Shown one piece after another: positions 12,643 to 31,263 of a DNA stretch of 64,000 nucleotides. Numbering within the stretch: the stretch's first letter is position 1; every line of letters starts with the position of its first letter. The stretch lies in the IMG/VR virus record IMGVR_UViG_3300009158_000031, positions 62,001 through 126,000 of that record; one strand, given 5' to 3'. The translations under genes and the position numbers were made by a program. The notes below the pieces were generated by a model that saw nothing but the letters and a program-made list of their open reading frames with translations, did not search any database and was not told the origin of the DNA.

Positions 12643-12652
12643 TAGACTCAGA

Positions 12653-14744: not shown

Positions 14745-15770
14745 ATGAAATTACTTAACTTTAATGAGTTCATTACTCATCTAAATGAATCACAAGAACT
14801 TCTATTAGAAGCTTTCAATTCGAGCATTCTACAAAGCATCGTGACTAAACAACGTCAAGGAGGAATTGATAAGAAATTCTTTGATATGCTTTCTAAAAAC
14901 TATGGTATTGCTCCTTCTGAAGTAACTAACCTAGATATTAATATCGTTCAACCTGCAGATGCTGCTAAATATGCGGCTGCAAATCCAAATCAAATCTTAA
15001 TTTATTATTCAACAACTGAAAAGGAAAATCCTTATGTTTCCAAAGATGGTAAATATTACTACGGAACAATTAAAGCAGATGTTCCTTTAGCTATCGTTAA
15101 AGGTAAATTATTCATGGGGTTATCTTATGATCGTTGGGCTTCCAAAGGTGGAAAAGCCGTATATAAATTAGTTCCTGGAACCGATGCTGGTTCTTCATTA
15201 GGACTTGATAACAAACAAGGTAGTGGATATGGTTCTAGTGGAATCAATACCCTTAAGAAAATGGCAGATATTTCTGATATCGTTTATGCCATCAATCCGG
15301 ATACAGTTCCTTCATCTAAACAAACTAGAGATGATCGAAAAGAATCTAAATCTGGTGCTGCTGCTTTTATCGATGATAAACAATTTAAAGCGGACAATCA
15401 AGCTAGATATGAAGCTATTTTAAAAGATCGTGCTTCTAATGAAGATATTGATGCAATAGTTTCTGCCGCAATCGAAGAGCTTACTGCACAAATTAAAGCG
15501 GCCGTAGCTAAAAAGACCATGACCAAATATGGAGATATTCTTGTTGGAACTTCACCTAAAGGAAGAGAAGTTAAAATGAGTGATGCTGGTAATCATATGA
15601 GTAACATTCTTAGAGATTATGGTTATTATGCTCAAGGTAAAAATGATCAAGCTAAATCTGAAGAACGTTGGGGTGAAATGGACAAATACCAACGTGATAG
15701 ATCTGCTCAATATGCTAAATCTATTAAAGACGCTTATAACAAGATTAGTACTTTTAATTACGCTTGGTAA
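14745..15770 (+). CDS. hypothetical protein, putative internal head protein
   Basis: MKLLNFNEFITHLNE start; 341 aa ORF. Confidence 0.65.
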   Translation: MKLLNFNEFITHLNESQELLLEAFNSSILQSIVTKQRQGGIDKKFFDMLSKNYGIAPSEVTNLDINIVQPADAAKYAAANPNQILIYYSTTEKENPYVSKDGKYYYGTIKADVPLAIVKGKLFMGLSYDRWASKGGKAVYKLVPGTDAGSSLGLDNKQGSGYGSSGINTLKKMADISDIVYAINPDTVPSSKQTRDDRKESKSGAAAFIDDKQFKADNQARYEAILKDRASNEDIDAIVSAAIEELTAQIKAAVAKKTMTKYGDILVGTSPKGREVKMSDAGNHMSNILRDYGYYAQGKNDQAKSEERWGEMDKYQRDRSAQYAKSIKDAYNKISTFNYAW

Positions 15771-15771
15771 T

Positions 15772-16278
15772 ATGCCATCAACTTCAATTGCACAACAAAG
15801 ACTTATGGGTCAGGCTTACGCTCTCAAAACTGGAGAGCTTAAGTCTTCTGACTTAGATCCTAAATATCGAAAACAAATAGAAGATCTAGCCGCATCAATG
15901 ACAGAAAAAGACCTAAAAGACTTTGCTGAAACATCACATAAAGGCCTACCACAAAAAATAAAAGAAAACTATAAAATGAATAAACACATACCTACGTTCG
16001 AATCTTTCATTAATGAAAACATTGATGTTAAATATTGGGCAGGATATAATGATGATGCTGGAGTTCAAGGACAAAGCAAACATTATTCAGATAAATCAAC
16101 AGATTTTGAGGATACCTTTGAAGATGCTGTTACTGAATGGAACCAAGAAGCTGATGGTGAAAATATGATAAAAGGTGCTCAAATTCAAAAGATCAAGAAA
16201 TTAGCACAAGAATTCTTCAAGAAAGCCGGTTGGATATCTGTTAATGTTGTCCAAGCAATGATTACTCAAGAATCTTAA
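15772..16278 (+). CDS. DUF3008-like domain fused to a second small domain
   Basis: MPSTSIAQQRLMG..SMTEKDLKDFAETSHKGLP; internal MNKHIPTFESFINE. Confidence 0.6.
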   Translation: MPSTSIAQQRLMGQAYALKTGELKSSDLDPKYRKQIEDLAASMTEKDLKDFAETSHKGLPQKIKENYKMNKHIPTFESFINENIDVKYWAGYNDDAGVQGQSKHYSDKSTDFEDTFEDAVTEWNQEADGENMIKGAQIQKIKKLAQEFFKKAGWISVNVVQAMITQES

Positions 16279-16280
16279 TA

Positions 16281-16517
16281 ATGAAACCTATAAAAGAAAA
16301 TACTTCTGCTGCAACACCTGCTTCTGTAAATGGAATGGGTGCTCCGGCATTGCCAGGTAATCCTGGAACTCAAGCTGGATTCGTCTCACAAAAGACAGGA
16401 TCCGGTGATATACCTTATTCGTTGGTTAAAGGCCAACCGAAGAAAAAGAAGAAATCCTCCTTCAAGAAATTTAAAGACTTCATTAAAGGAAGCGAGGAAG
16501 TTAGAACTGCCTTTTAA
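16281..16517 (+). CDS. small hypothetical protein
   Basis: TPASVNGMGAPALPG..GSGD motif and basic tail. Confidence 0.55.
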   Translation: MKPIKENTSAATPASVNGMGAPALPGNPGTQAGFVSQKTGSGDIPYSLVKGQPKKKKKSSFKKFKDFIKGSEEVRTAF

Positions 16518-16552
16518 GTTAGCGGTCCTTAATAAAACAGAGAAAATGGACA

Positions 16553-16774
16553 GTGATAATTGTAAAACGAACATTCAACAAATTGTCTTGGAGGACGATT
16601 TGCCTGATCCTAGCAACATTCTTCAACCCTCTTGGATTCGACGCCTTATTCGCTTTGGTGACGAAACTGACTGGATCTTATCTAATAACCGATATTATCT
16701 TCTATTCCATTTCGGCATTCTTTTTTGGTTTATATTTTTTAACCGATCCAAATAAAAAGTTTTCTACAAAGTAA
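16553..16774 (+). CDS. small two-helix membrane protein
   Basis: Two hydrophobic segments; GTG start. Confidence 0.5.
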   Translation: MIIVKRTFNKLSWRTICLILATFFNPLGFDALFALVTKLTGSYLITDIIFYSISAFFFGLYFLTDPNKKFSTK

Positions 16775-16811
16775 AATCCCAACATATAATTTCATATAAT
16801 TATAAAATCAT

Positions 16812-17303
16812 ATGAAATTTCTAAAAGTACGTAATGTGAAGTCACCTATCCGAGGAACTTCAAGATCTGCCGGTATCGATTTTTTTGTTCCTGATGAATG
16901 GAATGAAGGTCAACCATACTCAATACCTCCAGGAGGCAGAGTTCTAATTCCCAGTGGAATCAAAGTAAATGTAATTGATGGTCATGCTCTTATTGCTTTT
17001 AATAAGAGTGGAATTGCCACGAAGAAAGGTATTGTCGTAGGTGCTGAAGTAGTTGATGAAGATTACCAAGGAGAAATTCATTTACATATTATAAACACAA
17101 ATCAACTAACCGAAACTTTCGGTGATAGTGCTTATGCAATAGATACTGGTTATGTAGACATTATTCCAGGTGAAAAATTAATGCAATTTATTTTGCTACC
17201 TATTAATTATTCAATGCCAGAAGAAGTCGAAACCATCGATGATCTATATGATGGTGTTACTGAAAGAGGTGAAGGTGGATTTGGATCAACTGGATTAAAA
17301 TAA
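16812..17303 (+). CDS. dut: trimeric dUTPase
   Basis: SAGIDF, NKSG, VVDEDYQGEI, RGEGGFGSTG. Confidence 0.95.
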   Translation: MKFLKVRNVKSPIRGTSRSAGIDFFVPDEWNEGQPYSIPPGGRVLIPSGIKVNVIDGHALIAFNKSGIATKKGIVVGAEVVDEDYQGEIHLHIINTNQLTETFGDSAYAIDTGYVDIIPGEKLMQFILLPINYSMPEEVETIDDLYDGVTERGEGGFGSTGLK

Positions 17304-17316
17304 AAAAAAACAAATT

Positions 17317-17544
17317 ATGCAAAATCAAAATTTAAAAGGACCGAGTGTCGATTTATCGATGACAACCGCTGTAAAATGTGAAGCTGAAGATTGTGAGAAT
17401 GAACGTTTCCGAGAAGTATATTTGATTCGTAAAATATCATCTATAATTACCGGAAGTGCTAAAGATTCTTACATGCCAATACCAACTTTCGAGTGCACTA
17501 AATGCGGTCATATAAATAAAGAATTCACCGTAAAAACAACGTAA
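17317..17544 (+). CDS. small Zn-binding hypothetical protein
   Basis: CEAEDC and CTKCGH. Confidence 0.6.
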   Translation: MQNQNLKGPSVDLSMTTAVKCEAEDCENERFREVYLIRKISSIITGSAKDSYMPIPTFECTKCGHINKEFTVKTT

Positions 17545-18945
17545 ATGATATTAGATATTGAAAACAATTTCAATGAATTAACCATTTCTTATTTCAATAA
17601 GGAAGGAAATATTCGTTTAAAGAAATATAAACTAACTGAAGAACAATGTTCCAATTGGCGATTATGTTCTGAATCCGATACCAAGAAATCTACACAATTC
17701 AGGAATTGGGATGGAAAACCAGTAAAGAAAGTTAAAGATAAAAAACTTCAAAAATTCTCCATCTATGAATTTATCAACAATTTAGAAGATGAAGATAAAG
17801 ATGAAATTATCGGCTTCCATCTTCCTAAAATACAATCCGTCGATATTGAAACTGAAGTAATTGATTCTTTTCCAGATCCAAATATTGCTCGAGAAAGAAT
17901 CACCACAATTGCAATTTCAACAGAAACTAATAAAACTATTGTTCTTGGTTGGAAAAAGATCACAAAAGAACAAGAGAAAGAAATATTCGATAAACATCGA
18001 GAATATCTGAAAAACTTCGGTGATTGGGATTTCAAATATATTTGTTTCGAGGATGAATTCAATATGATGTATACTTTTGTTAATCAATTTATTCCAAATT
18101 TCTCCGTAATGATTGGATGGAATTTTATGAACTTTGACTGGAAATACATCTATAATCGTTGTAAAAAGCTCGGGATAGATATTACCTCGGCTTCTCCTAG
18201 TAAGAAAGTACAAGGTAATGACAATATCTTAATGCACGTTGGTATTATCGATTATCTTGATATTTATAGAAGATGGGATAGAACAGTAGCTATCAAAGAA
18301 AGCAATTCATTAGATTTTGTTGCTAGTGCTGTTTTAGGAACAACCAAATTAAAGTACAATGGAACTCTACAAGAGTTATACGAAAATGATTATGACAAAT
18401 ACATTTTATATAATGCCGTCGATGCTGCATTGGTGTCTTTAATACATCGTAAATTAAAAACTCTTAATATGGTATTCTCTATCGGATGTATTTGTCGCGT
18501 TCCCATCTATCGAGCTTCCTCGGCTGTGAATGTTACTGAAGCTCTTCTTTGGAAAGGATTCTATAATCGAAATCAAGTAATTGCCGATGATAGAACCGAA
18601 AAAATCAAAGGATCTTATGAAGGTGCTTATGTTAAAGAACCTGAACCAGGAATGTTCAGAGCGGCAACATGTTTTGATTATGCATCTCTATATCCATCAA
18701 TTATGCGTCAATACAATGTGTCACCTGAATCATTCTTACGAAAAGAATTAAACCAAGAAAATCTAGAAAAATATCGTCAAGATCCCAATTTCGTTGTATC
18801 GGTTACCGGTGCAATATATGATAACTCTAAGGTTTCTGTGTTAAAAGAAATTCTAACCGACCTTTATACTGAACGTAAAACGAATAAAAATCGTGGACTC
18901 GATATCGAAAGATCTCTAATTAAAATAAAAAAGAAAAATGCCTAA
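17545..18945 (+). CDS. 43A: family B DNA polymerase, N-terminal subunit (3'-5' exonuclease and motif A), gp43A-like
   Basis: VDIET, GWNFMNFD, YNAVDA, FDYASLYPS; ends in the first fingers helix. Confidence 0.9.
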   Translation: MILDIENNFNELTISYFNKEGNIRLKKYKLTEEQCSNWRLCSESDTKKSTQFRNWDGKPVKKVKDKKLQKFSIYEFINNLEDEDKDEIIGFHLPKIQSVDIETEVIDSFPDPNIARERITTIAISTETNKTIVLGWKKITKEQEKEIFDKHREYLKNFGDWDFKYICFEDEFNMMYTFVNQFIPNFSVMIGWNFMNFDWKYIYNRCKKLGIDITSASPSKKVQGNDNILMHVGIIDYLDIYRRWDRTVAIKESNSLDFVASAVLGTTKLKYNGTLQELYENDYDKYILYNAVDAALVSLIHRKLKTLNMVFSIGCICRVPIYRASSAVNVTEALLWKGFYNRNQVIADDRTEKIKGSYEGAYVKEPEPGMFRAATCFDYASLYPSIMRQYNVSPESFLRKELNQENLEKYRQDPNFVVSVTGAIYDNSKVSVLKEILTDLYTERKTNKNRGLDIERSLIKIKKKNA

Positions 18946-19942
18946 ACTATTCGAAGAACGATTGGAGTACAAGCCCTTTGAGTACCCTGTGTACTATAAT
19001 GAAGGATGGTTAAAACAAATGCAAGCATTTTGGCTGCATACAGAAATACAAATGCAAGGTGATGTAAAAGATTGGAAAGAACACCTTCTTCCTCATGAAA
19101 AAAATCTAGTTGGAAATATTCTTCTTGGTTTCGCACAAACTGAATGTGCTGTTTCTGATTATTGGACTGGAATGGTTACTAAATGGTTTCCTAAACATGA
19201 AATCAAACAAATGGCAATAGCCTTTGGTTCTCAAGAAACAATACATGCAACTGCATATTCTTATCTGAATGAAACTTTAGGTCTTGAAGATTTTGCTGCT
19301 TTTATGCATGAACCTACTATTGCTGCTAAATTCGAATATCTACTTTCAACGGAATCTGATTATACTCATGAAGATCTAATAAAATCTCCTAAGGCTAGAA
19401 AAGATGCTGCTAAATCGCTTGCTATCTTTTCTGCATTTGCTGAAGGTGTTTCTTTATATTCATCGTTTGCCGTTTTATATTCTTTTCAAATGCGAAACAT
19501 GCTTAAAGGAATTGGTCAACAAATGAAATGGTCAGTAAGAGATGAATCACTACATTCTAAAATGGGTTGCCAACTATTCCGTCATATGTGTGAAGAGTAT
19601 CCTGAATTAAAGGAAGATGTTCGTTATGAAGTTGAATATGCTGCGAAACTTATGGTAGATATGGAACATAAATTTATTAATAAAATATTCGAAGAAGGAG
19701 ATTTACTAAATCTCAAAGCTGAAGATGTTAAAAACTTTATTTCTCGTAGAGCAAATGAAAAGCTAATGGAATTAGGTTACGATCCTATTTTAGAATATGA
19801 TATTGAATCAGCTAATCAATTAGAATGGTTCGATCACTTAACTGGTGGAACTACACATACCGACTTTTTTGCTATTCGTTCAACTGATTATGCAAAAGCC
19901 GGTGAAGGTGAAGATTGGTCCGATGATGAACTATGGAATTAA
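18938..19942 (+). CDS. nrdB: class I ribonucleotide reductase beta subunit
   Basis: ETIHATAY, FAEGVSLYSSF, RDESLH, DFFA. Confidence 0.95.
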   Translation: MPKLFEERLEYKPFEYPVYYNEGWLKQMQAFWLHTEIQMQGDVKDWKEHLLPHEKNLVGNILLGFAQTECAVSDYWTGMVTKWFPKHEIKQMAIAFGSQETIHATAYSYLNETLGLEDFAAFMHEPTIAAKFEYLLSTESDYTHEDLIKSPKARKDAAKSLAIFSAFAEGVSLYSSFAVLYSFQMRNMLKGIGQQMKWSVRDESLHSKMGCQLFRHMCEEYPELKEDVRYEVEYAAKLMVDMEHKFINKIFEEGDLLNLKAEDVKNFISRRANEKLMELGYDPILEYDIESANQLEWFDHLTGGTTHTDFFAIRSTDYAKAGEGEDWSDDELWN

Positions 19943-19956
19943 AAATTAAGTAATAT

Positions 19957-21765
19957 ATGGAAGAAAGAAAAGATAATATAAATCATCATGGAACCGAATT
20001 AGGTTGGGAACTCGGTGTAGATTTTCCTATGTGGGGAAATACCGAGATTTACGTAAAGACAATATCTAAAGGATATTTGTTAAAAGGAGAGACTCCTAAA
20101 GATGCCTATTGGCGAGTATGTACAACCGTAGCAAAACGTTTAGGCAAACCAGAAATGGCTTCTAAATTCTTTGATTATATTTGGAAAGGTTGGTTAAATC
20201 TAGCTACTCCAGTTCTTTCAAATACCGGAACTGAACGAGGTCTTCCAATATCATGTTTTGGTATTGATGTTGCCGATTCAATTTTTGATATTGGTACCAA
20301 GAATCTGGAACTTATGTTGCTTGCTAAACATGGTGGTGGTGTTGGAGTTGGTATTAATCAAATCCGACCTGCCGGAACAATAATCAAGAATAATGGAACA
20401 TCTGATGGTGTCGTTCCTTTTTGTAAAATTTATGATTCAACTATTTTAGCAACTTCACAAGGAAGTGTTAGACGAGGCGCTGCTTCTGTTAATATTGATA
20501 TTGAACACAATGATTTTTGGGAATGGTTAGAAATTCGAGAACCAAAAGGTGATGTTAATCGACAATCTCTTAATCTGCATCAATGCGTTATTATCTCTGA
20601 TGCATTTATGAATAAAGTTGAACAAGGAGATAAAGAAGCAAGATCAAGATGGACTGCAGTACTTCGTAAACGACGTACAACCGGTGAACCATATATCATG
20701 TACAAAGGAAATGTTAATCGCAACAATCCTGAAGCCTATAAACAAAATGGTCTTAAAGTTTACATGACTAATATTTGTTCAGAAATTACTTTACATACCG
20801 ACGAATCTCATTCATTTGTATGTTGTTTATCTTCTATTAATCTTGCTAAATATGATGAATGGAAAGATACTGATCTTATTTACACATCAACTTGGTTTTT
20901 AGATGGTGTACTTGAAGAATTTATACAGAAAGCAAAATACATGAGCGGATTTACCAATTCTGTTAGATCTGCCGAAAAAGGAAGAGCATTAGGTCTTGGA
21001 GTTTTAGGATGGCATACTTATTTACAAGATAAAGGGCTTCCTTTCGAAGGTCTTCTTGCAAGATTCGAAACTCGCAAGATATTCTCTCAAATTAAGCTAG
21101 AATCTGATCAAGCTTCTAGAGATATGGCTAGAGAATATGGAGAACCACTTTGGTGTATTGGAACTGGAATGCGTAATACTCATTTACGAGCAATTGCACC
21201 AACCGTATCCAATTCTAAATTAAGTGGAAATGTATCTGCTGGTATTGAACCATGGGCAGCAAACGTATTTACCGAACAAACTGCTAAAGGAACTTTCATT
21301 CGTAAAAATCCTACATTGGAGAAATATCTTAAACGTATGAAACGTAATCAAAAAGAAGTATGGGATCAAATACTTATTGATGGTGGATCGATTCAAGGTT
21401 TACAATTTCTAGATGATTGGTTCTTTCACCGAGATTCTTTGGTAAATAAAGAAAAGATCGAAACTTTATCTGATATTGAAAAAACCGAATTGATTCCATT
21501 CAAAGATGTATTTAAGACATTCAAAGAAATTAATCAATTGGAATTAGTAAAACAAGCCGGATTACGTCAACAATACATTGACCAATCAGTTTCTCTTAAT
21601 CTTGCATTTCCTACTGAAGCTACTCCTAAATTTATCAATCAAGTTCATATGGAAGCTTACAAACAAGGAATTAAAACACTCTATTACATGAGAACCGAAT
21701 CTGTTCTTCGAGGTGATATTGCCGCTAAAGCACTCGATGAAAATTGTGCATCTTGCGACGGATAG
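19957..21765 (+). CDS. nrdA: class I ribonucleotide reductase alpha subunit, no evident ATP cone
   Basis: PISCF, TNICSEI, GLGVLG, AIAPT, KTLYY, C-terminal CASC. Confidence 0.95.
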   Translation: MEERKDNINHHGTELGWELGVDFPMWGNTEIYVKTISKGYLLKGETPKDAYWRVCTTVAKRLGKPEMASKFFDYIWKGWLNLATPVLSNTGTERGLPISCFGIDVADSIFDIGTKNLELMLLAKHGGGVGVGINQIRPAGTIIKNNGTSDGVVPFCKIYDSTILATSQGSVRRGAASVNIDIEHNDFWEWLEIREPKGDVNRQSLNLHQCVIISDAFMNKVEQGDKEARSRWTAVLRKRRTTGEPYIMYKGNVNRNNPEAYKQNGLKVYMTNICSEITLHTDESHSFVCCLSSINLAKYDEWKDTDLIYTSTWFLDGVLEEFIQKAKYMSGFTNSVRSAEKGRALGLGVLGWHTYLQDKGLPFEGLLARFETRKIFSQIKLESDQASRDMAREYGEPLWCIGTGMRNTHLRAIAPTVSNSKLSGNVSAGIEPWAANVFTEQTAKGTFIRKNPTLEKYLKRMKRNQKEVWDQILIDGGSIQGLQFLDDWFFHRDSLVNKEKIETLSDIEKTELIPFKDVFKTFKEINQLELVKQAGLRQQYIDQSVSLNLAFPTEATPKFINQVHMEAYKQGIKTLYYMRTESVLRGDIAAKALDENCASCDG

Positions 21766-21786
21766 TAAAAACTAATTAACATATTT

Positions 21787-21815
21787 AAGGGATTCATTTT
21801 TATGGATCCCTTTTT
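21787..21815 (+). terminator. intrinsic terminator after nrdA
   Basis: AAGGGATTCA..TGGATCCC-TTTTT. Confidence 0.8.
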
Positions 21816-21828
21816 CATATAATTAAAT

Positions 21829-22041
21829 ATGGCGATATTACATCATTTAAGTAAACCTAAATCTAGACAAGATATTGTCTTTGAAGAAGATCTAGCAATG
21901 GATTCAGATGGATGGTTCATTCGAGTAAAACACATAAACAAAAAAGACGGATCTACCGCTAGTTCATCGTGTATTATACTCAAAGATATGGAACAATGGC
22001 TAAATACTTATATCCGAGATGGATATGCAGAGCTTACTTAA
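21829..22041 (+). CDS. small hypothetical protein
   Basis: ORF after a CATATAA motif. Confidence 0.5.
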   Translation: MAILHHLSKPKSRQDIVFEEDLAMDSDGWFIRVKHINKKDGSTASSSCIILKDMEQWLNTYIRDGYAELT

Positions 22042-22081
22042 TAATCAAATCAATCATAAAATAATAAACAAATCAATAAAA

Positions 22082-22828
22082 ATGAAAATTAAAATCACGA
22101 AAATTTCCGTTGCAAATTTATCTATGTTAGTAAGGAAAATGTTGCTAATGGACAATTCAATCTATTTGAATTTTGATAGTGAAAGAATTTGGTCAGATGT
22201 TTATACTCCAACAAAGGATGTTGTAAAATCTAATTACCTTCCAATCGCCAGCGTATTTGAATTTGAATCACCAATAACACAACCAATTAAGTTATCGTTC
22301 TATTCAGGATCTAAGCTACTCGAATGTTTAAAATATTTTGATGCACATCATCTTTCTGCCGAAGTATCTTGCTTCGAAGATATGGAAGATAAACTAATCT
22401 ATGCAGATAAAATCATTCTACAAGATCAAAAACTAAAAATTGAAATTGCCTGTCAAGATATTTCTTTAGGATTCACTTCAATGACTCCAGATCAAACCAT
22501 TCGAGCATTTGATCTTGGTAGTGAAGAATTCCAATTTATCTTAGCCGCTGAAGACTTCAATAAAATTGTATCTTTACAAACAATGGATAAGGGTGAATTA
22601 CTATCAATTTATTCCGACGAACAAGGTGTACATATCAAAAATGAAGGATTTGATATTATCGTAGATGATCGAGTAAAAATCAAATCTACTCCAAAAAATA
22701 TCTTCAAATCTTTTCTATCTAGAATTGATAAAGAAACTTATCGCATCCATGTTTGTTCTAATAAATTAATTCTTGATTCAACTGAAACAAACACAAAATT
22801 AGCTCTAAACCTAGCAATAACAGAATAA
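22082..22828 (+). CDS. 45: sliding clamp (gp45/PCNA-like)
   Basis: About 250 aa with two repeated beta-alpha-alpha-beta units, in replication context between polymerase halves. Confidence 0.6.
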   Translation: MKIKITKISVANLSMLVRKMLLMDNSIYLNFDSERIWSDVYTPTKDVVKSNYLPIASVFEFESPITQPIKLSFYSGSKLLECLKYFDAHHLSAEVSCFEDMEDKLIYADKIILQDQKLKIEIACQDISLGFTSMTPDQTIRAFDLGSEEFQFILAAEDFNKIVSLQTMDKGELLSIYSDEQGVHIKNEGFDIIVDDRVKIKSTPKNIFKSFLSRIDKETYRIHVCSNKLILDSTETNTKLALNLAITE

Positions 22829-22833
22829 AAATT

Positions 22834-23010
22834 ATGTACAACCTATACCCAAAATTTATTCATTACAATGAATATACGAAAAAATGGTTCGCTTTCGATA
22901 GAGAAGAAGCCGTTTTATATCTTAACGATAATACACAAATGGAATCTCTTAAAGAATACAATTCAATTGAAGATTTATTAAAGGACCATAAACAAAAAAC
23001 AAATGATTAA
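22834..23010 (+). CDS. 58-aa hypothetical protein (not in the ORF track)
   Basis: MYNLYPKFIHYNEYTKKWFAFDREEA...KTND; fills the gap and overlaps the polymerase C-subunit start. Confidence 0.5.
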   Translation: MYNLYPKFIHYNEYTKKWFAFDREEAVLYLNDNTQMESLKEYNSIEDLLKDHKQKTND

Positions 23011-24211
23011 TTTCAATCCAGAAAAAATTGCAATAGAAGATATTCCAGCACTTCTCGAATCCCTATCAGGTAAAGATCGAGAAGATGCTATAACCGCTCT
23101 TAAAGCCGAACAACTTCGATGCAGTACTCAGGAACAGGGAATTAAACTAATTATTAACTCAATTTATGGAGCCTTCGCGAATGAGTATTTTCACTTCTAT
23201 AATATTTCAGTTGCAGAAACAGTAACTCTTCAAGGACAAGATGCTATCAAATTTACTGAACGTATGGTTGATAAGTATTTCAAAGAATTCTTTCATCGAG
23301 ACAAACCTTTACTAACTGAATTAGGTGTTATCGAAAACCAAGTAGTTCCTAGAATCAAAGGTAATGTTTGGAAATATACCGATACGGATTCAGGTTATTT
23401 AATCTTCGAAGAATGTATGGAAGCGGTTCAATGGAAAGGTACCGTAAAAGAATTTGTTCTAACTCTTAATTCCTTTAGATTATCTGATTATATTAAGAAA
23501 GTTCTTAATGATTATGCCAAAACATTTCAAACCGAAAATTATCTAGATTTCGAATTAGAAACTATTGCAGAAAATGCAATTTGGGTAGCTAAGAAAAAAT
23601 ACATCCAAAATATCATTTGGAAAGATGGTAAAGATTACGATAATCTTTCATATATCAAAACAACTGGTCTAGAAATTATTCAATCATCAACTCCTGTATT
23701 TTGCAGAGGTAAACTTATCGATGCTGTAAAGTATATGTTCTCAAAAGGTAAGATTACCGAAAAAGACGTAAGTGATTTAGTTAAGCTAATCAAAGAAATC
23801 AAACGAGAATTTAAGCTATCTAATATTGAAAAAATTTCAATGGGTCGTTCGGTTTCCGATTATCAAAAATTTGTAATCAACGATAACGATAAGCTAGAAC
23901 TTCAAAAAGGTTGTCCTATTCATGTTCGAGCAGCAGCACATTACAATTATTTACTTAATCAAAATCCCAAACTTAAAGGTAAATACGAAATGATTCGATC
24001 AGGTGATAAGCTAAAATGGTATCATGCAAACGATTCATTTTGTGATGTATTCGCCTATAAAGCAGGAATGCATCCCATGGAAATTGCTCCTAAAATGAAT
24101 ATTGAAAGACAATTTCAAGGATCAATTCTAGATCCACTTAATCGAATCATAACGCCAACAGGTATTCCGGCTTTGAATCCTTCATTGGCATATACAGTAA
24201 GCCTTTTCTAA
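23003..24211 (+). CDS. 43B: family B DNA polymerase, C-terminal subunit (motifs B and C), gp43B-like
   Basis: KLIINSIYG, YTDTDS, AKKKYI, GLEIIQSSTP. Confidence 0.9.
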   Translation: MINFNPEKIAIEDIPALLESLSGKDREDAITALKAEQLRCSTQEQGIKLIINSIYGAFANEYFHFYNISVAETVTLQGQDAIKFTERMVDKYFKEFFHRDKPLLTELGVIENQVVPRIKGNVWKYTDTDSGYLIFEECMEAVQWKGTVKEFVLTLNSFRLSDYIKKVLNDYAKTFQTENYLDFELETIAENAIWVAKKKYIQNIIWKDGKDYDNLSYIKTTGLEIIQSSTPVFCRGKLIDAVKYMFSKGKITEKDVSDLVKLIKEIKREFKLSNIEKISMGRSVSDYQKFVINDNDKLELQKGCPIHVRAAAHYNYLLNQNPKLKGKYEMIRSGDKLKWYHANDSFCDVFAYKAGMHPMEIAPKMNIERQFQGSILDPLNRIITPTGIPALNPSLAYTVSLF

Positions 24212-24239
24212 CATATAAAAATTAAATTAAATAAACAAC

Positions 24240-25433
24240 ATGAGCAAAGAATTTACAATTGGTGAGCTTCAGAAAGAGCTTAGAAAAATCAATCCATTTG
24301 GTGACGTTATCAGCAAATCGGAATTTTCAAAAATAACAGAATGGATCGATACTGGAAATTATCATCTAAACGCAGTTTTTAGTGGTGATCTTTTCGGTGG
24401 TATTCCTAACAATCGAACAATATGTTTAGCTGGTGATTCAGGTACTGGTAAAACATTCTTACTTCTTAATATGGTCGCAAAAGCTCAGGAAATGGGTTAT
24501 TATGTGGTTTATTATGATACTGAAGGTGCAGTCGATGTAGATAACATTCAATCATTTGGAGTTAATCCTGAAAGATTCGATCATCAACCGGTTTCAGATA
24601 TTGCAAAATTCAGAACTTCTATTACCACATTAGTGAAAAAAATGATGGAAGCTAAACAAGCTAAAATGACTCTACCTAAAATCATGATTTGTCTCGATTC
24701 GTTAGGGATGCTTGCAACTACAAAAGAAATTGATGATGCAATCAGTGGAAATACTGCCGCTGATATGACTCGTGCAAAATCGATTCGCTCTTTATTCCGT
24801 ATTATTACTTCTGATCTAACTGGTCTTGGAATTCCATTCGTATTTACAAATCACACATACGCTTCTACTGGAATGTTCCCTACAGTGAACCTATCCGGTG
24901 GTGGAGGTTTAATCTATTCGGCTTCTGTTATCTTGGCTTTATCTAAAGCTCAAATTAAAGAAGGAACCGTACAAACTGGAATTATTGTTACCGTTAAAAC
25001 TCTTAAAAATCGTTTTGGTAAACCAATTCCTATTAAGTTTCATATCCGTTGGGATAAAGGAATGAACCCTTATATTGGAATGGAAGAATATATGAATTGG
25101 GAAACTTGTGGTATTCAAAAAGGAAATTTAATTACCGATAAAGAATACGAGAAAATGAGCGATAAAGATAAAGCAACCGCTCATTCTTTTGATTATCAAG
25201 GTGAAACCAAATACTTCATTCCTCGCGAAACTGCTCGTAATTATATAGTTAAACATTTAGGAAAGGGTATTCCAGCTAATGAATTATTTACTCCGGAAGT
25301 TTGGACTAACGAAATACTACAGATGATTAATGAAAAATGTATTAAACCTAAATTCAGCTATGGAATTAATTCTGCTGAAGATGAAGTTGAATCAATTTTC
25401 TTAAACTCTGATGATATTAGCGATGCTGAATAA
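24240..25433 (+). CDS. uvsX: RecA-like recombinase UvsX
   Basis: LAGDSGTGKT, YDTEGA, LDSLGML, NHTY, LSGGGG, YSAS. Confidence 0.95.
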   Translation: MSKEFTIGELQKELRKINPFGDVISKSEFSKITEWIDTGNYHLNAVFSGDLFGGIPNNRTICLAGDSGTGKTFLLLNMVAKAQEMGYYVVYYDTEGAVDVDNIQSFGVNPERFDHQPVSDIAKFRTSITTLVKKMMEAKQAKMTLPKIMICLDSLGMLATTKEIDDAISGNTAADMTRAKSIRSLFRIITSDLTGLGIPFVFTNHTYASTGMFPTVNLSGGGGLIYSASVILALSKAQIKEGTVQTGIIVTVKTLKNRFGKPIPIKFHIRWDKGMNPYIGMEEYMNWETCGIQKGNLITDKEYEKMSDKDKATAHSFDYQGETKYFIPRETARNYIVKHLGKGIPANELFTPEVWTNEILQMINEKCIKPKFSYGINSAEDEVESIFLNSDDISDAE

Positions 25434-25734
25434 AGAACAAATAAAAATCAAATACATGCTCGGATCTTTTCGAGATGAACTAGATTTTCCTACATATGAG
25501 GACTTCCTCTACCTAGTACATAATTGGTACTGGGTAGAAGGTGGTCATAATTTTATACATACATATCGTGGTTTAGAAGAAACCGGTAATGTGATTTTTC
25601 CAGATTCAACCTTGAAAGAAAAACTAAACGGAAACATTGAACAATATAACGACCTTATTAGCAATTTGCTAAAGGACAACAAAATAAAAGTAAATAAAGA
25701 TACTAAATTCACAATATACTATGAAGTTCTATAA
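25411..25734 (+). CDS. hypothetical protein
   Basis: ORF between uvsX and the helicase. Confidence 0.5.
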   Translation: MILAMLNKEQIKIKYMLGSFRDELDFPTYEDFLYLVHNWYWVEGGHNFIHTYRGLEETGNVIFPDSTLKEKLNGNIEQYNDLISNLLKDNKIKVNKDTKFTIYYEVL

Positions 25735-25766
25735 CAACATATAATTAACATATAATTATAAAATCT

Positions 25767-27065
25767 ATGATTGGATCATCCGAATTTGAAAAGGCGTTTT
25801 ACTTATATACCTGTAAAAACCCAGAATACTTATCAAGTATTGACGAAGGATTTTACGATAACGACGAAATCTCGACTTTACACAAAATCACAAAAGGCTT
25901 TCACAGTAGATTTTCACAAATTCCTACCCGAGACCAAGTTAAATTAATTGCTAGACAAGATCAATTTAAAGATCGAATCACGGAATCTATTATAGATCTT
26001 GTATTCGACGAACCTCTTGATTCATACGATCCTGATTGGATTCGAGAAACTAGTGAAGCTTGGATTCTTTGGAAATCTCTAGATAAATCTTTGATTGATA
26101 CAATCGAATATGTTAAAACTGTAAAGGTTAATCCTGATAATGTTAAAGACGTAATTCAAAAAGTAAAATCTCTTATTAATGAAAGAAACTCTATTACTTT
26201 TGATAAGGACTTAGGTAAAGACTTCTTCTCTGCTGAAAATCACATACCTACAGCAAATTCTAAAATCACCACATGTCATAATTTCGTTGATAATTTCAGT
26301 GGTGGTTATCGAACAAAATCTTTAATTGTATATGCCGGTGAACAAAATGTCGGTAAATCAATTTGGTTAGCTAATGATGCTGTAAATTATGTTCGTGCAG
26401 GTTTCGATGTTGCAGTAATAACTGCTGAAATGGCAGATATTGATTTCATTCATCGTATCGGTGCAAACCTATTAAATGTTAAAGTAAGTGAATACGAAAG
26501 AAAATCTAAAGAATCAGGATTTATACAAACTCGTTTAGCTTCTTTAGCAAATGGAGTAATCCCTACTGGAAATCTATTCGTTAAAGAATATCCAACTTCT
26601 CAAGTAACTGTTCCTGAAATTGAAATGTATTTAAGAGAATTAGAATTAACTAAAGGAATTAAACTTAAAGTAATTATAATTGACTATATTAATATTCTAG
26701 CAAATTATCGAAATCCCAATACAGAAAATACTTACATGAAGATTAAACAAATCGCCGAAGATCTTCGTGCTATGGCAGTTCGAAACGATTGGGTTGTAAT
26801 AACTGCTACTCAAATTAATCGAAGTGGTTATGATTCAACTGAATTAAACCTAGGAAATATCGCTGAATCTGCCGGATTATCACATACTGCCGATATGATT
26901 TATGGTATTATACAAGATACCTCAATGCATATGAATAATGAATATTGGTTGAAACTATTAAAAATAAGAAACGGTTCTGGTAAAAACAGCCGAACCATGT
27001 ATCGAATAAATTATGAATATATGAGATTAACTGAAAGCGATACAACAATAACAGCAAGTATATAA
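25767..27065 (+). CDS. 41: replicative DnaB-like helicase (gp41)
   Basis: AGEQNVGKS, ITAEM, IIDYIN, TATQINRSG, AESAGL, KIRNG. Confidence 0.95.
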   Translation: MIGSSEFEKAFYLYTCKNPEYLSSIDEGFYDNDEISTLHKITKGFHSRFSQIPTRDQVKLIARQDQFKDRITESIIDLVFDEPLDSYDPDWIRETSEAWILWKSLDKSLIDTIEYVKTVKVNPDNVKDVIQKVKSLINERNSITFDKDLGKDFFSAENHIPTANSKITTCHNFVDNFSGGYRTKSLIVYAGEQNVGKSIWLANDAVNYVRAGFDVAVITAEMADIDFIHRIGANLLNVKVSEYERKSKESGFIQTRLASLANGVIPTGNLFVKEYPTSQVTVPEIEMYLRELELTKGIKLKVIIIDYINILANYRNPNTENTYMKIKQIAEDLRAMAVRNDWVVITATQINRSGYDSTELNLGNIAESAGLSHTADMIYGIIQDTSMHMNNEYWLKLLKIRNGSGKNSRTMYRINYEYMRLTESDTTITASI

Positions 27066-27066: not shown

Positions 27067-27564
27067 ATGAATACTCCAGAAAATAACATACCAGAAAATG
27101 AATTATCGGAAGATGGTCTACCATTAGTTCCTGAAGAAAATGCAGTAAAACGAGATAAAATATTCGATAACGATTACGATCAAATCGAATTAGAAAGTTC
27201 CAATCAAACGTTTTCTATTGATGATTCTTATAAAGCTCATTCCATCGAAGATTCAATCGATGTTGATCTAGTGAAAGAAAGACTATATGAAGAAATTGCT
27301 AAAGTCGAGAAATATCAAGCATACCTAGAACCCATCAATGGTGAATTTAAGAAAATTGGAAAATCTGAAATTAATGAAATATACAGTCATTTAATTAAAG
27401 CAATTGGTCCAGGAACTCGAATTGAAATTTACTCTTGTATGTGTGAAATATATGAAATATCACCTGACAAATTCTACGAATCTTTATCTAATAAGTTCAA
27501 AACCGAACTTATTCAAGATCTCAAGTCCCGAGGATATTTACAAAACATAAAAGCACTTTTTTAA
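27067..27564 (+). CDS. hypothetical protein
   Basis: Acidic ORF coupled to both neighbours. Confidence 0.6.
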   Translation: MNTPENNIPENELSEDGLPLVPEENAVKRDKIFDNDYDQIELESSNQTFSIDDSYKAHSIEDSIDVDLVKERLYEEIAKVEKYQAYLEPINGEFKKIGKSEINEIYSHLIKAIGPGTRIEIYSCMCEIYEISPDKFYESLSNKFKTELIQDLKSRGYLQNIKALF

Positions 27565-28640
27565 TGAAGATAAACGCAAACAAAGCAATCATTGTATCCG
27601 ATACACACTTAGGAGCAAGGTCAAATTCTGCTGAATGGTTAACCACAATGATGGATTGGTTTCGCGAAGATTTTATACCTAAAGCAAAAGAGCTTTACGA
27701 ACCAGGAACAATTCTAATACATACTGGTGATGTATTTGATAATCGTCAATCTATTAATCTAATGGTTCTTCATGAAGGAATGGCAATATTCGAAGAACTT
27801 GGTCATATTTTTGATGCTATATACATTATAGCCGGAAATCATGATGTTATGAAAAAAACATCAAACGACATATCATCTTTAGATTGCTTAAAATACATTC
27901 CTAAAGTACATATCATCAAAGAACCTACTTTAGCAGATATCAATGGAACCAAAGCTCTATTTATGCCTTGGAGAACCGATGTTAATGAAGAAAAAACTTG
28001 TATTGCCGAATTTGGTAAAGAAGATCCTAAACTTCTATTCTGTCATACTAACATCTACTCGCTTAAATTTGATAATTCAAGAGATGTAGAAGAAGGTCTT
28101 CATGCCGATGATCTAAAAACCTACGAACGAGTTTATTCTGGTCATATACATTGGGGACAGAAACGAGGAAATGTAACAATGGTTGGCAATCCATATCAAA
28201 TGACTCGTTCCGATGCTGGAAATCCAAAAGGATTCTATGAATTTAACTTCAATACCTTTGAAGAAACTTTTCATGAGAATACTTATTCACCTAAGTTTGT
28301 TAGAGTTCATCTAAATCGTTATTTAGAGAATACTTTAGGAGAGATATTAGATGAATGTAGGAATAACAGAGTTGATCTGTATATACCTTCGCACTATATA
28401 CTTAAATACCAAGTTAATCCAATCATAGACGCCATCTCAGAAGTGGCTAGGAAGCTAGAGGTATTCCCATTTGAAGAAGATCAAAATATTGATATCAATG
28501 GAGAAGATCTAGAAACACTTTCAATATTTGAAATGTGCCAAAAATACATCACTCAAATGCGTAGTGTAGATGATTCCGTAAAGAAAAGAATCGAGGTTAA
28601 AATCTCTAATTTATACAATCAAACCATCAAAGAAATTTAA
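27564..28640 (+). CDS. 47: Mre11/SbcD-like nuclease (gp47)
   Basis: SDTHLG, GDVFD, GNHD, CH, SGHIH. Confidence 0.95.
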   Translation: MKINANKAIIVSDTHLGARSNSAEWLTTMMDWFREDFIPKAKELYEPGTILIHTGDVFDNRQSINLMVLHEGMAIFEELGHIFDAIYIIAGNHDVMKKTSNDISSLDCLKYIPKVHIIKEPTLADINGTKALFMPWRTDVNEEKTCIAEFGKEDPKLLFCHTNIYSLKFDNSRDVEEGLHADDLKTYERVYSGHIHWGQKRGNVTMVGNPYQMTRSDAGNPKGFYEFNFNTFEETFHENTYSPKFVRVHLNRYLENTLGEILDECRNNRVDLYIPSHYILKYQVNPIIDAISEVARKLEVFPFEEDQNIDINGEDLETLSIFEMCQKYITQMRSVDDSVKKRIEVKISNLYNQTIKEI

Positions 28641-28641
28641 T

Positions 28642-30312
28642 ATGCGAATTCAAACAGTAGAATGGAAAAATTTCAATAGTTATGGAAATCAAATTCAGAA
28701 GATTGAATTTGAAAAAGATGCAGGAGATTTATACCTGCTTCTAGGATCTAATGGTCATGGAAAATCTACAATATCAGAAGTAATTACATTTGCTCTTTAC
28801 GGTAGAATTGAAAGAAAAAACAAATCAGATCTTCCTAATAGAATTAATAAAAACCTTTGGTGTCGAATCGTTATTCGATCGAAAAATAAATTAGTCGAAA
28901 TTACTCGTGGAGTATCTCCTAATCTATTTGAAGTTAAAATAGATACGGTTACTTATGATACTGCTGGTAATGCAAATGTCCAAGATTATCTAGAAACCGA
29001 AATATTCGATATTCCATATCAAGTATTTAAGAATATCATTGTACTTTCAATTAATGATTTTAGATCATTCTTAACAATGTCTACTGGTGATAAACGAAAC
29101 ATCGTAGATAGGCTATTTGGATTCACTATAATTAATCAAATGCGTGACCAAATTAGATCAGAAAGAAAAGATCTTCGCGAAAGAATTAAAACGCTTAGTG
29201 ATGAGCTAAATATTATTCAAGAATCCATTGAATCTGTCAATACTAAAATTTCTACATTAGAATCTTCTAAAAAAGTAGATCGAATTAGATTAATAGAAGA
29301 ATACAAAGGGAAAATTAAAGATATGATTGAACAAAAACGTAAGATCAATGATGCTTTAGCCTTAGTTAAAACCAAAGAAACCGACTTTAATGATGCAATC
29401 AAATCAAAAGGGAATGAAAAAGAACAATTATCTTTTGAGCTAAGAAATGCAGTAAATTCATTAAAGCTATACAACAATGCAAAATGTCCTACATGTAATG
29501 CAGATCTAAATACAGAAAATCATCAACATCTTAAATCTGAATTAGAAGAGAAAGTAAGAACCAAACAGGAAGAATATAACGATATCCAAGAAGAATATCT
29601 AGACCTTTCCGGCAAAATGAATTCTCTTTCTTCTAAAATAAAAGAAATGGATTCATCTTGTATTAAGATCAATCTTCTTATCGGACAATACAAAAATGAA
29701 GCTGAAAGAATTGCTAAAGAGACTCGAGAAGAAGATATGGATTATCTTAATGAAATCTTATCCGAGAATGAAACTAAACTTCTTGAAAGAAAATCTAGCG
29801 TCTCTAATAACTCAACCGAAGATACCTTCTTAGATATTGTTGAAAGTGTACTTGGCGATGATGGTGTTAAGAATTTAGCTATGAAAACTATCATTCCAAC
29901 CATCAATCAATCTATTCAAAATATGTCTAAACAAATGCACTTACCTTATTTGATTAGATTCGATGAAAAATTCGATTGTTCGATACACTCTTTAGGTGAA
30001 GAAATTAATGCTCGAAGCATGTCAACTGGTGAACGTAAAAAAGCAGATTTTGTTATTATTATCTCTCTTTTAAGATTGCTTAAAATTAGATATCCTTCAT
30101 TAAACCTTCTTTTCTTAGATGAAATATTCTCATCAGTAGATTCTGGAGGTATTTATGAAATTTTAAAAATTCTAAAAGATGTATCGGTTGAAAATTCATT
30201 AAACACATGGGTAGTTAACCATACAGAACTTCCAATAGAACTTTTCGATAAAAGAGTTGAAGCTATAAAAGAATCTGGGTTCTCTAAATTGCATATAGAA
30301 AATATCTCGTAA
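28642..30312 (+). CDS. 46: Rad50/SbcC-like ATPase (gp46)
   Basis: GSNGHGKST, Zn hook CPTC, MSTGE, LFLDEIFS. Confidence 0.95.
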   Translation: MRIQTVEWKNFNSYGNQIQKIEFEKDAGDLYLLLGSNGHGKSTISEVITFALYGRIERKNKSDLPNRINKNLWCRIVIRSKNKLVEITRGVSPNLFEVKIDTVTYDTAGNANVQDYLETEIFDIPYQVFKNIIVLSINDFRSFLTMSTGDKRNIVDRLFGFTIINQMRDQIRSERKDLRERIKTLSDELNIIQESIESVNTKISTLESSKKVDRIRLIEEYKGKIKDMIEQKRKINDALALVKTKETDFNDAIKSKGNEKEQLSFELRNAVNSLKLYNNAKCPTCNADLNTENHQHLKSELEEKVRTKQEEYNDIQEEYLDLSGKMNSLSSKIKEMDSSCIKINLLIGQYKNEAERIAKETREEDMDYLNEILSENETKLLERKSSVSNNSTEDTFLDIVESVLGDDGVKNLAMKTIIPTINQSIQNMSKQMHLPYLIRFDEKFDCSIHSLGEEINARSMSTGERKKADFVIIISLLRLLKIRYPSLNLLFLDEIFSSVDSGGIYEILKILKDVSVENSLNTWVVNHTELPIELFDKRVEAIKESGFSKLHIENIS

Positions 30313-30345
30313 TTACACGAGAATATATAAAATAAAAGATACTAA

Positions 30346-31230: not shown

Positions 31231-31263
31231 AAACAAAGATATATAATAAAATCAAGAAGTGAC

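What the first reader, a model, noticed from the sequence alone, without database searches (positions are those of the whole stretch)
17545..24211. Family-B DNA polymerase split into two genes separated by nrdB, nrdA and the clamp
Seen: exonuclease motifs and motif A end at 18945 (..ERKTNKNRGLDIERSLIKIKKKNA). Motifs B and C start in a separate gene at 23003, about 4 kb and five genes later, across a terminator. The break lies at the tip of the fingers helices, and there are no intein or intron signatures. Known: adjacent gp43A/43B splits at this site occur in some Aeromonas T4-like phages, and distant split PolB genes occur in Methanothermobacter. Inference: a two-subunit enzyme held together by a coiled coil, whose halves can be regulated separately.
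Basis: partly seen in the sequence, partly recalled or inferred. Interest (0 to 1): 0.62.

Follow-up and report, generated by a model that had tools for sequence, protein, structure and literature searches.

The report
Two-gene phage DNA polymerase, split at fingertip
A large freshwater phage encodes its only recognisable DNA polymerase as two separate genes about 4 kb apart, cut at the tip of the "fingers"; this kind of split is already known from T4-like phages, but here it turns out to be the usual state in a very large group of uncultured phages.

Summary
ORF 17545-18945 carries the N-terminal, exonuclease and motif A parts of a T4/RB69-type family-B polymerase. ORF 23003-24211 carries motifs B, C, KKKY, the thumb and a C-terminal LF tail. 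Five ORFs lie between them: nrdB, nrdA, a 70-aa ORF, a PCNA-fold clamp and a 58-aa ORF. A terminator-like hairpin follows nrdA. I found no intein, no intron and no flanking repeats. The 254-kb record holds no other polymerase. The break maps to T4 gp43 residues about 505-513, the same fingertip loop that is split in Aeromonas 44RR gp43A/B and in Acinetobacter T4-like phages, whose halves lie up to 3 kb apart. Seventeen related contigs keep the split. Both halves are under strong purifying selection (dN/dS 0.04 and 0.07). A complex prediction passes its controls (0.83 against 0.00). The most likely reading is a heterodimeric polymerase, joined mainly through a shared palm sheet as well as the paired fingers helices. 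This is a new member of a known kind. What I add: the split dominates a large metagenomic clade (118 of the best 150 protein clusters), often in the order polN...clamp-polC-uvsX. The halves lie more than 100 kb apart in megaphages, and full-length forms are scattered across the tree.

The parts
16812..17303 (+). dUTPase, the conserved upstream neighbour of the module
   Evidence: Pfam dUTPase E 2e-15. It is syntenic in all 17 related loci.
17317..17544 (+). Conserved 75-aa ORF of unknown function that abuts the start of the N-half
   Evidence: No Pfam or PHROG match. tblastn finds it at 44-100% identity directly upstream of polN in all 17 loci.
17545..18945 (+). PolB N-half (polN, equivalent to gp43A): N-terminal domain, 3'-5' exonuclease (Exo I D100/E102, Exo II N193/D198, Exo III Y289/D293), first part of the palm with motif A (D378..Y383 P384 S385), and the first fingers helix (R444 K445 K448)
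   Evidence: Pfam. phrog_2062 E 2e-87. Aligns to RB69 gp43 72-495. Invariant columns in A2. dN/dS 0.037.
18938..19942 (+). nrdB (class I RNR small subunit). Its ATG overlaps the polN stop (ATGCCTAA).
   Evidence: Pfam E 6e-58. Sequence.
19957..21765 (+). nrdA (class I RNR large subunit)
   Evidence: Pfam E 4e-89.
21787..21812 (+). Terminator-like hairpin (11-pair stem followed by a T run) between the polN-nrdB-nrdA block and the clamp-polC block
   Evidence: Hairpins at the same position with different stems occur in L007 and L013.
21829..22041 (+). 70-aa ORF of unknown function
   Evidence: No family match. Homologues in several relatives.
22019..22828 (+). PCNA-fold sliding clamp. The likely true start is 22082 (248 aa).
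   Evidence: Model pLDDT 83.4. Foldseek top hits are PCNA and sliding clamps, E 6e-10. Relatives start at M22. dN/dS 0.057.
22834..23010 (+). 58-aa ORF. Its stop overlaps the polC ATG (ATGATTAA). It is found only in the closest relatives.
23003..24211 (+). PolB C-half (polC, equivalent to gp43B): second fingers helix with motif B (K48, N52, S53, Y55, G56), second part of the palm with motif C (Y125 T D127 T D129 S130) and KKKY (197-200), thumb, and a C-terminal ..SLF tail
   Evidence: Pfam. phrog_1918 E 2.5e-68. Aligns to RB69 525-818. Invariant columns in A3. dN/dS 0.072.
24240..25433 (+). UvsX/RecA-like recombinase, the conserved downstream neighbour
   Evidence: Pfam RecA and phrog_97. Syntenic in the relatives.

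Best explanation
The phage makes its replicative family-B DNA polymerase from two separately translated polypeptides that assemble without covalent joining. The N-half supplies the N-terminal domain, the proofreading exonuclease, the palm strand with motif A and the first fingers helix. The C-half supplies the second fingers helix (motif B), the rest of the palm (motif C, KKKY), the thumb and the C-terminal tail that, by analogy with T4/RB69 gp43, binds the sliding clamp. The chain is cut in the loop at the fingertip, a variable surface loop where T4-like phages and an engineered Pfu enzyme tolerate a break. The two chains are held mainly by completing one palm beta-sheet between them, and also by the antiparallel pairing of the two fingers helices. 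The N-half is translated in a run with nrdB and nrdA. The C-half is translated after the clamp gene, behind a likely terminator, so the two may be made in different amounts or at different times. Shown here: gene structure, motif content, conservation, purifying selection, and absence of intein and intron. Inferred: assembly (prediction plus biochemical precedent), activity, and separate regulation.
For: Domain content and break point. All catalytic motifs are invariant across relatives of 57-100% identity. dN/dS is 0.037 for polN and 0.072 for polC against L004. The same split is present in 17 IMG/VR contigs. It is also present in PAU, MA9V-2, LR756500/02/04 and Lak-A2. No other PolB, PolA or Pol III alpha is found in the 254-kb record. 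The predicted complex scores ipSAE 0.83 against a best control of 0.00; that mark was reached by 58 of 80 solved complexes and 2 of 110 mismatched pairs. The runs agree in at least 96% of contacts and the partner pLDDT is at least 86. The pass largely reflects the known intact PolB fold. Precedent: the split 43A and 43B products of the Aeromonas phages co-purify and have polymerase activity (PMC2988022). Pfu split at the fingertip keeps wild-type kinetics (PMC3061061). Stop and start codons overlap at both junctions.
Against: There is no biochemical or protein-level evidence for this phage. The complex prediction can pass from memory of intact PolB structures. The genome record is only about 83% complete, so a further polymerase cannot be excluded. 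The read evidence consists of contigs at low depth, which cannot exclude a rare joined form.
Confidence: 0.85

Rival explanations
1. The halves are joined after translation by a split intein (protein trans-splicing), as in Nanoarchaeum equitans PolB or the motif C split inteins of jumbo phages.
For: Relatives of this polymerase do carry inteins and split-intein-like pieces, but at motif C and not at the fingertip (MIJ3 in PMC6892783).
Against: The N-half ends 9-17 residues after its last residue aligned to RB69 or the Pfam profile, which leaves no room for an N-intein of about 100 aa. The C-half head has no HN|S/C/T block and aligns to RB69 from residue 13. Neither half has a Pfam intein hit at E<=0.01, whereas the same scan finds inteins readily in relatives.
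Confidence: 0.02
2. One continuous polymerase gene or mRNA is restored by RNA splicing or by DNA excision of the 4-kb insert during infection.
For: None found.
Against: No Rfam intron family matches. No direct repeats flank the insert. The insert holds conserved, selected genes (RNR, clamp). No contig in DNA or RNA libraries joins about 18945 to about 23003, although this test has low power. In megaphages the halves lie more than 100 kb apart and, in three of them, on opposite strands.
Confidence: 0.02
3. The two genes are relics and replication depends on another polymerase, encoded either by the host or in the unsampled part of the genome.
For: The record is about 83% complete.
Against: dN/dS is 0.04-0.07 and every catalytic residue is invariant. 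The genes sit in a full T4-type replication module with UvsW, clamp, UvsX, DnaB, gp46 and gp47. No other polymerase family is found.
Confidence: 0.03
4. Besides forming the holoenzyme, the halves also act on their own, for example the N-half as a free 3'-5' exonuclease. Unequal dosage of the two would then be the selective point of the split.
For: The N-half holds a complete exonuclease domain. A positionally conserved terminator-like hairpin separates the two transcription blocks. In megaphages the halves are in unrelated genome regions.
Against: No expression data exist. The palm is shared between the chains, so the polymerase function needs both. This reading adds to the best explanation and does not exclude it.
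Confidence: 0.1
5. Assembly artefact or chimera.
For: None.
Against: An identical layout appears in IMG/VR contigs from different samples, at 100% identity (L003, L005), 95% (L004) and 57-72% in 14 others. Contigs from another run bridge the o58/polC junction and the nrdA/clamp interval without differences.
Confidence: 0.01

Closest known systems
Fingertip-split gp43A/gp43B of T4-related phages (Aeromonas 44RR, 25, 31, 65; Acinetobacter 133 and Hadassahvirus PhT2). Source: Petrov et al. 2006 and 2010, as cited in PMC3061061 and PMC2988022.
   Same: The break falls in the same loop (T4 gp43 about 505-513). There are two ORFs, no intein at the break, and the N-half and C-half have the same domain content. 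Non-adjacent arrangements exist there too: PhT2 has six small ORFs (2.1 kb) between the halves, and up to 3 kb is reported (PMC3061061).
   Different: The lineage is different: the Straboviridae rows form their own clade (100*) in the C-domain tree. Here the cargo between the halves consists of replication genes with known roles (RNR, sliding clamp) and not small ORFs, a homing endonuclease or an untranslated spacer. In this lineage the split is the common state, whereas to my knowledge most T4-like phages, like T4 itself, have an intact gene 43.
Jumbo and mega phages associated with Bacteroidota hosts: Sphingomonas phage PAU, Chryseobacterium phages MA9V-1/2, Prevotella Lak megaphages, huge-phage assemblies LR756500-04
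   Same: These are the closest database relatives (32-46% identity) and are split at the same site. PAU, MA9V-2 and LR756500 also have a homologue of the clamp gene between the halves, next to polC.
   Different: Cargo and spacing differ. PAU has 2.4 kb with dUTPase. MA9V-2 has 3.5 kb with TnpB. LR756500 has about 10 kb. LR756502, LR756504 and Lak-A2 have 130-280 kb, with the halves on opposite strands. In the library I searched I found no paper that comments on the split in these phages. GenBank simply lists two 'DNA polymerase' genes.
Engineered Pfu polymerase split near the fingertip (PMC3061061)
   Same: A PolB cut at the fingertip into two chains, translated from overlapping stop and start codons, keeps wild-type behaviour. 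This is the best functional analogue of the ATGxxTAA junctions seen here.
   Different: It is an archaeal enzyme with a laboratory-made, adjacent split.
PhiKZ DNAP-N/DNAP-C (PMC13648687) and Methanothermobacter PolB1/PolB2
   Same: Family-B polymerases made of two separately encoded subunits at distant loci. For PhiKZ a stable 1:1 complex has been shown.
   Different: The break points differ: a palm insertion upstream of the fingers in PhiKZ, and the palm about 83 residues C-terminal to the Pfu fingertip split in Methanothermobacter (PMC3061061).

Membership tests
Family-B replicative DNA polymerase (T4/RB69 gp43 type) | Exo I, II and III motifs with their acidic residues | tested here: met
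   D100/E102, N193/D198 and Y289/D293 are invariant in A2. Pfam DNA_pol_B_exo1.
Family-B replicative DNA polymerase (T4/RB69 gp43 type) | Polymerase motifs A (DxxSLYPS), B (KxxxNSxYG), C (YxDTDS) and KKRY | tested here: met
   Motif A D378..S385 lies in the N-half. K48..G56, Y125-S130 and K197-Y200 lie in the C-half. Alignments to RB69.
Family-B replicative DNA polymerase (T4/RB69 gp43 type) | C-terminal clamp-binding tail and a cognate sliding clamp | tested here: inconclusive
   L401 and F402 at the C-terminus are invariant, and a PCNA-fold protein is encoded next door. Binding was not tested.
Fingertip-split gp43A/gp43B type | Break between the two fingers helices (T4 gp43 about 505-513) | tested here: met
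   In a concatenated alignment with T4, the window's N-half ends at T4 506, 44RR at 510 and PhT2 at 510.
Fingertip-split gp43A/gp43B type | Two independent cistrons with no intein or intron at the break | tested here: met
Fingertip-split gp43A/gp43B type | The subunits form an active complex | not testable with these tools
   Prediction only: ipSAE 0.83 against a best control of 0.00. Biochemistry exists for the Aeromonas-phage split enzyme and for split Pfu (PMC2988022, PMC3061061).
Intein-split (trans-spliced) PolB | An N-intein at the end of the first piece and a C-intein (..HN) followed by a Ser/Cys/Thr nucleophile at the start of the second | tested here: not met
   No intein domain and no room for one. 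Such blocks are seen at motif C in relatives, which serves as a positive control.
PhiKZ-type or Methanothermobacter-type split PolB | Break inside the palm domain | tested here: not met
   The break lies in the fingers. Motif A and fingers helix 1 are in the N-half, and motif B is in the C-half.
PCNA-like sliding clamp (the 269/248-aa ORF) | Two-domain clamp fold | tested here: met
   Model pLDDT 83.4 and pTM 0.77. Foldseek top hits are PCNA, 9-1-1 and beta clamps, probability 1.00. No sequence-family match.
PCNA-like sliding clamp (the 269/248-aa ORF) | Ring-forming trimer loaded by a clamp loader | not tested
   I did not examine oligomer state or look for a clamp loader.

The most novel reading that the evidence does not exclude
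The fingertip split, often with the sliding-clamp gene lying just upstream of the C-half, may be the ancestral and dominant state of a very large, mostly uncultured clade of jumbo and mega phages whose cultured members infect Bacteroidota. On this reading the few full-length genes in the clade are secondary re-fusions or replacements. The split would be kept because it is useful: for example, it could allow separate dosage of the exonuclease and polymerase modules, or an open fingertip could tolerate modified nucleotides. Split Pfu accepts gamma-phosphate-modified dNTPs, and PAU DNA is heavily modified.
Probability: 0.15. Interest if true: 0.6.

Novelty: new member of a known kind. Interest (0 to 1): 0.35.

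Why it matters
A fingertip-split PolB is an established curiosity of a few T4-like phages. This window shows the same solution in a distant lineage of freshwater jumbo phages. The follow-up indicates that it is the rule there: most of the nearest 150 protein clusters are stand-alone C-halves. The halves can drift from 2 kb to about 280 kb apart, and the fused state is scattered over the tree. There are practical consequences. Annotation pipelines and marker-gene surveys that use PolB will see half-length genes as fragments. Completeness or "polymerase present" calls on short contigs can be wrong. The lineage also offers natural two-chain PolB enzymes for structural work and enzyme engineering. 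It does not open a new mechanistic question unless the split is shown to be adaptive.

Tried and rejected
- Rfam scan of 16000-26000 at E<=1 found nothing, so there is no intron lead.
- The repeat search found no att-like direct repeats around the insert, only short chance matches.
- Pfam and PHROGs gave nothing for the 75-, 70-, 269- and 58-aa ORFs. Only the 269-aa ORF was resolved, by folding.
- Laying reads returned short, low-depth contigs only. They give useful bridging pieces but have no power to exclude rare joined forms or to show transcript ends. The listed joints are short-sided and look unrelated.
- A first joint MAFFT alignment of free halves with full-length proteins misplaced the ends. 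I replaced it with a concatenated alignment.
- The hhalign test of the 257-aa ORF upstream of polC in LR756502 showed it is not a clamp homologue. Clamp-polC adjacency is therefore frequent but not universal.
- Sigma-70-type promoter matches were fewer than in shuffled sequence, so I make no promoter claim.
- Literature searches for a description of the split in PAU, Lak, MA9V or jumbo phages in general found none. The library lacks the original Petrov papers, which I cite second-hand.
- For Lak-A2 alone, I also listed ORFs in a script with TAG not counted as a stop, because the published genome uses code 15 (PMC7824862). The polymerase pieces hold no in-frame TAG, so nothing depends on this.
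Full report
**What is in the window**

The window is bases 62001-126000 of a 254,393-base IMG/VR virus record. The record is linear and about 83% complete by CheckV. G+C is about 32%. The nearest sequencing runs are freshwater and lake metagenomes.

On the + strand the ORFs run as follows:

| Coordinates | Gene |
|---|---|
| 11119-12642 | UvsW-like helicase |
| 16812-17303 | dUTPase |
| 17317-17544 | 75-aa ORF |
| 17545-18945 | PolB N-half (466 aa) |
| 18938-19942 | nrdB |
| 19957-21765 | nrdA |
| 21829-22041 | 70-aa ORF |
| 22019-22828 | 269-aa ORF |
| 22834-23010 | 58-aa ORF |
| 23003-24211 | PolB C-half (402 aa) |
| 24240-25433 | UvsX/RecA |
| 25767-27065 | DnaB-type helicase |
| 27564-30312 | gp47-like and gp46-like nuclease subunits |

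This is a T4-type replication and recombination module.

**Checking the observation**

- The N-half matches Pfam DNA_pol_B_exo1 and positions 16-136 of the 453-position DNA_pol_B profile. The C-half matches positions 148-367.
- Against solved structures, the N-half aligns to RB69 gp43 residues 72-495 and the C-half to 525-818.
- In alignments with nine relatives, the Exo I, II and III residues and motif A are invariant in the N-half. Motif B, motif C (YTDTDS), KKKY and a C-terminal LF are invariant in the C-half.
- The 269-aa ORF has no sequence-family match. Its model folds with pLDDT 83, and Foldseek places it with PCNA, 9-1-1 and beta clamps (E 6e-10). Relatives start at its M22, so the gene is probably 22082-22828.
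- A strong terminator-like hairpin lies at 21787-21812, after nrdA.
- The polN stop overlaps the nrdB start (ATGCCTAA). The stop of the 58-aa ORF overlaps the polC start (ATGATTAA).

**Is the gene really in two pieces?**

- No Rfam family, and so no group I or II intron, matches at E<=1.
- Neither half has an intein domain. The N-half ends only 9-17 residues after the last position aligned to RB69 or the Pfam profile, and the C-half aligns from residue 13. There is no room for a split intein.
- Inteins are easy to see in this lineage where they exist, which gives a positive control. In LR756500 and Lak-A2 the C-half is interrupted exactly at motif C by pieces with blocks B, F and G (..GDHS....VYDIEV..ILVHN|S). 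Many metagenomic relatives carry a Pfam Intein_splicing domain there.
- No direct repeats flank the 4-kb insert.
- The own record holds only these two PF00136 matches, one exonuclease domain, and no PolA or Pol III alpha.
- Contigs from another DNA run bridge the o58/polC start and the nrdA/clamp interval without a difference. An RNA-library contig of a close variant spans the clamp end, o58 and the polC start. No joint links 18945 to 23003. These are low-depth contigs, so the test is weak.

**Conservation**

- Seventeen IMG/VR contigs (57-100% identity) keep the order dut, 75-aa ORF, polN, [cargo], clamp, polC, uvsX wherever they extend that far.
- Between the window and L004, dN/dS is 0.037 for polN, 0.072 for polC and 0.057 for the clamp.
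- The cargo always includes a ribonucleotide reductase, but not the same one. Contigs L006-L009, L013 and L014 carry a class I nrdBA close to the window's. L010-L012 carry an unrelated class I pair (31-39% identity). L015-L019 carry a class II-like protein of about 620 aa.

**Where the break lies, and what is known**

I aligned concatenated halves with T4 gp43 and the intact Flavobacterium phage MaF61 polymerase. Every split maps within T4 residues 505-513:

- the window clade at 505-506;
- PAU, MA9V-2, LR756502 and LR756504 at 512-513;
- Aeromonas 44RR gp43A/B at 510;
- Acinetobacter PhT2 at 510.

This is the loop between the two fingers helices. The literature already describes this:

- Splits in the fingertip of gp43 occur in phages 133, 44RR, 31, 25 and 65, with the ORFs 2 bp to 3 kb apart (Petrov 2006 and 2010, as summarised in PMC3061061).
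- The split 43A and 43B products of the Aeromonas phages co-purify and are active (PMC2988022).
- Pfu polymerase split near the fingertip behaves like the wild type (PMC3061061).
- GenBank annotates PhT2 with 'gp43A split DNA polymerase', six small ORFs, then 'split DNA polymerase'.
- PHROGs has separate families for the two halves, phrog_2062 and phrog_1918.

Other split family-B enzymes break elsewhere: PhiKZ in a palm insertion (PMC13648687) and Methanothermobacter in the palm (PMC3061061).

**How it most likely works**

The complex prediction for the two halves scored 0.83 (ipSAE, median of three runs) against 0.00 for the best of three controls. That mark was reached by 58 of 80 solved complexes and 2 of 110 mismatched pairs. 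The runs agreed in at least 96% of contacts, and the partner's pLDDT was at least 86. Because intact PolB structures are known, this pass shows that the two chains can rebuild the canonical fold. It does not show that they bind.

The lowest-error contacts join the motif A strand (N 370-392) to the motif C hairpin and adjacent strands (C 121-136, 175-198). The palm is therefore built from both chains. N 437-461 runs antiparallel to C 11-58 with a 3-4 residue periodicity, which corresponds to the two fingers helices. So 'coiled coil' describes one part of the interface and not the main part.

The N-half is in a translational run with nrdB. The C-half follows the clamp, behind a hairpin that is also present after nrdA in L007 and L013, with different stem sequences. 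This fits two transcription blocks, but no expression data were available.

**Wider distribution (beyond the finding)**

The nearest database phages are the huge-phage assemblies LR756500-04, the Lak megaphages, PAU and MA9V-1/2. All are split:

| Phage | Arrangement of the two halves |
|---|---|
| LR756500 | About 10 kb apart, with the same dut-polN...clamp-polC-uvsX order |
| PAU | polN, dUTPase, two ORFs, clamp homologue (hhalign 94.7%), polC |
| MA9V-2 | polN, ORF, clamp homologue (85%), TnpB, polC |
| LR756502, LR756504, Lak-A2 | 130-280 kb apart, on opposite strands |

An exhaustive phmmer search with the C-half found 2,900 representatives at E<=1e-3. The best 150 break down as follows:

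- 92 stand-alone C-halves, plus one truncated;
- 25 C-halves with an insert of at least 80 aa, mostly an intein at motif C;
- 16 fragments that begin after motif C, at least ten of them with an IntC-like leader;
- 9 full-length proteins;
- 7 others.

In six contexts fetched for representatives, the N-half is never directly upstream of polC. A clamp homologue sits there in three, including one next to a full-length gene (L034, in the order RNR, clamp, intact PolB, UvsX).

I built a quick IQ-TREE (LG+G4) of the C domain with 112 rows. I left out rows with inserts, fragments and 'other'. The tree needs 10 changes of state for the 11 full-length rows, and well-supported branches force all 10. One of these changes is the T4/44RR/PhT2 clade, where I deliberately sampled split genes. 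Parsimony on this sample favours split as the background state with scattered full-length forms. The tree is unrooted and quick, and the direction of change is not established.

**Verdict**

It is incomplete on the interface, untested on regulation, and it understates prior knowledge.

This is a new member of a known kind. The added interest lies in how common and how widely spaced the split is in this uncultured lineage, and in the recurrent placement of the clamp gene next to the C-half.

Noticed in passing
window 18938-21765; L010-L012, L015-L019, L033, L034: The slot between polN and the clamp gene always holds a ribonucleotide reductase, but the RNRs are not orthologous: a class I nrdBA like the window's, an unrelated class I pair (31-39% identity), or a class II-like protein of about 620 aa. 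L034, which has an intact PolB, carries an ATP-cone class I type upstream of its clamp gene. In L033, nrdA is 80% identical to the window's although polC is only 42% and uvsX 47% identical. This points to lateral exchange of the RNR cassette.
   Followed up: partly
L022 (LR756500) 29805-33118; L030 (Lak-A2) 5884-8035; proteins P0002, P0008, P0092 and others: In relatives the C-half is interrupted at motif C (DTD|S) by a mini-intein, or by what looks like a split intein or fractured gene. The upstream piece ends in intein N blocks. The downstream piece starts with M plus about 40-55 aa ending ..ILVHN|S. P0002 is 67% identical to the window's C-half. Those phages would need three genes for one polymerase. 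A similar case is published for Pseudomonas jumbo phage MIJ3 (PMC6892783).
   Followed up: partly
tree of the C domain; L034 10001-12610: Full-length PolB genes are scattered singly among split ones: 10 changes for 11 rows. For example, P0005 (869 aa, a table-11 ORF) is sister to the split P0003 with 99% support. In L034 the intact gene sits at the polC position, after the clamp gene. Whether these are re-fusions, replacements or repeated splits is open.
   Followed up: partly
window 22019-22828: The 269-aa ORF probably starts at the ATG at 22082 (248 aa), as in most relatives. The first 21 residues are unconserved and have low pLDDT. With that start it no longer overlaps the 70-aa ORF.
   Followed up: yes
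window 17317-17544: A 75-aa ORF of unknown function abuts the polN start. It is conserved at that position in all 17 related loci (44-100% identity) and has no family match.
   Followed up: no
L020 (MA9V-2) 11693-12859; L011/L013 about 15518-16216; L018 10323-12403: Other cargo found between the halves in relatives: a TnpB-family gene (MA9V-2), an FkbM-type methyltransferase between the clamp and polC (L011, L013), and a U32 peptidase plus a DAHP synthase/chorismate mutase fusion (L018). The interval behaves as a hot spot for gene insertion.
   Followed up: no
window 21787-21812; L007 14226-14249; L013 14241-14272: The terminator-like hairpin after nrdA is conserved in position but not in stem sequence across relatives of about 70% identity. 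This is the pattern expected of a working terminator.
   Followed up: partly
whole record G000: The split minimal Pol III alpha that Iyer et al. 2021 report in group 2.2 jumbo phages (PMC7824862) was not detected with PF07733 in this record. It may be too divergent for the Pfam model, or it may lie in the missing part.
   Followed up: no
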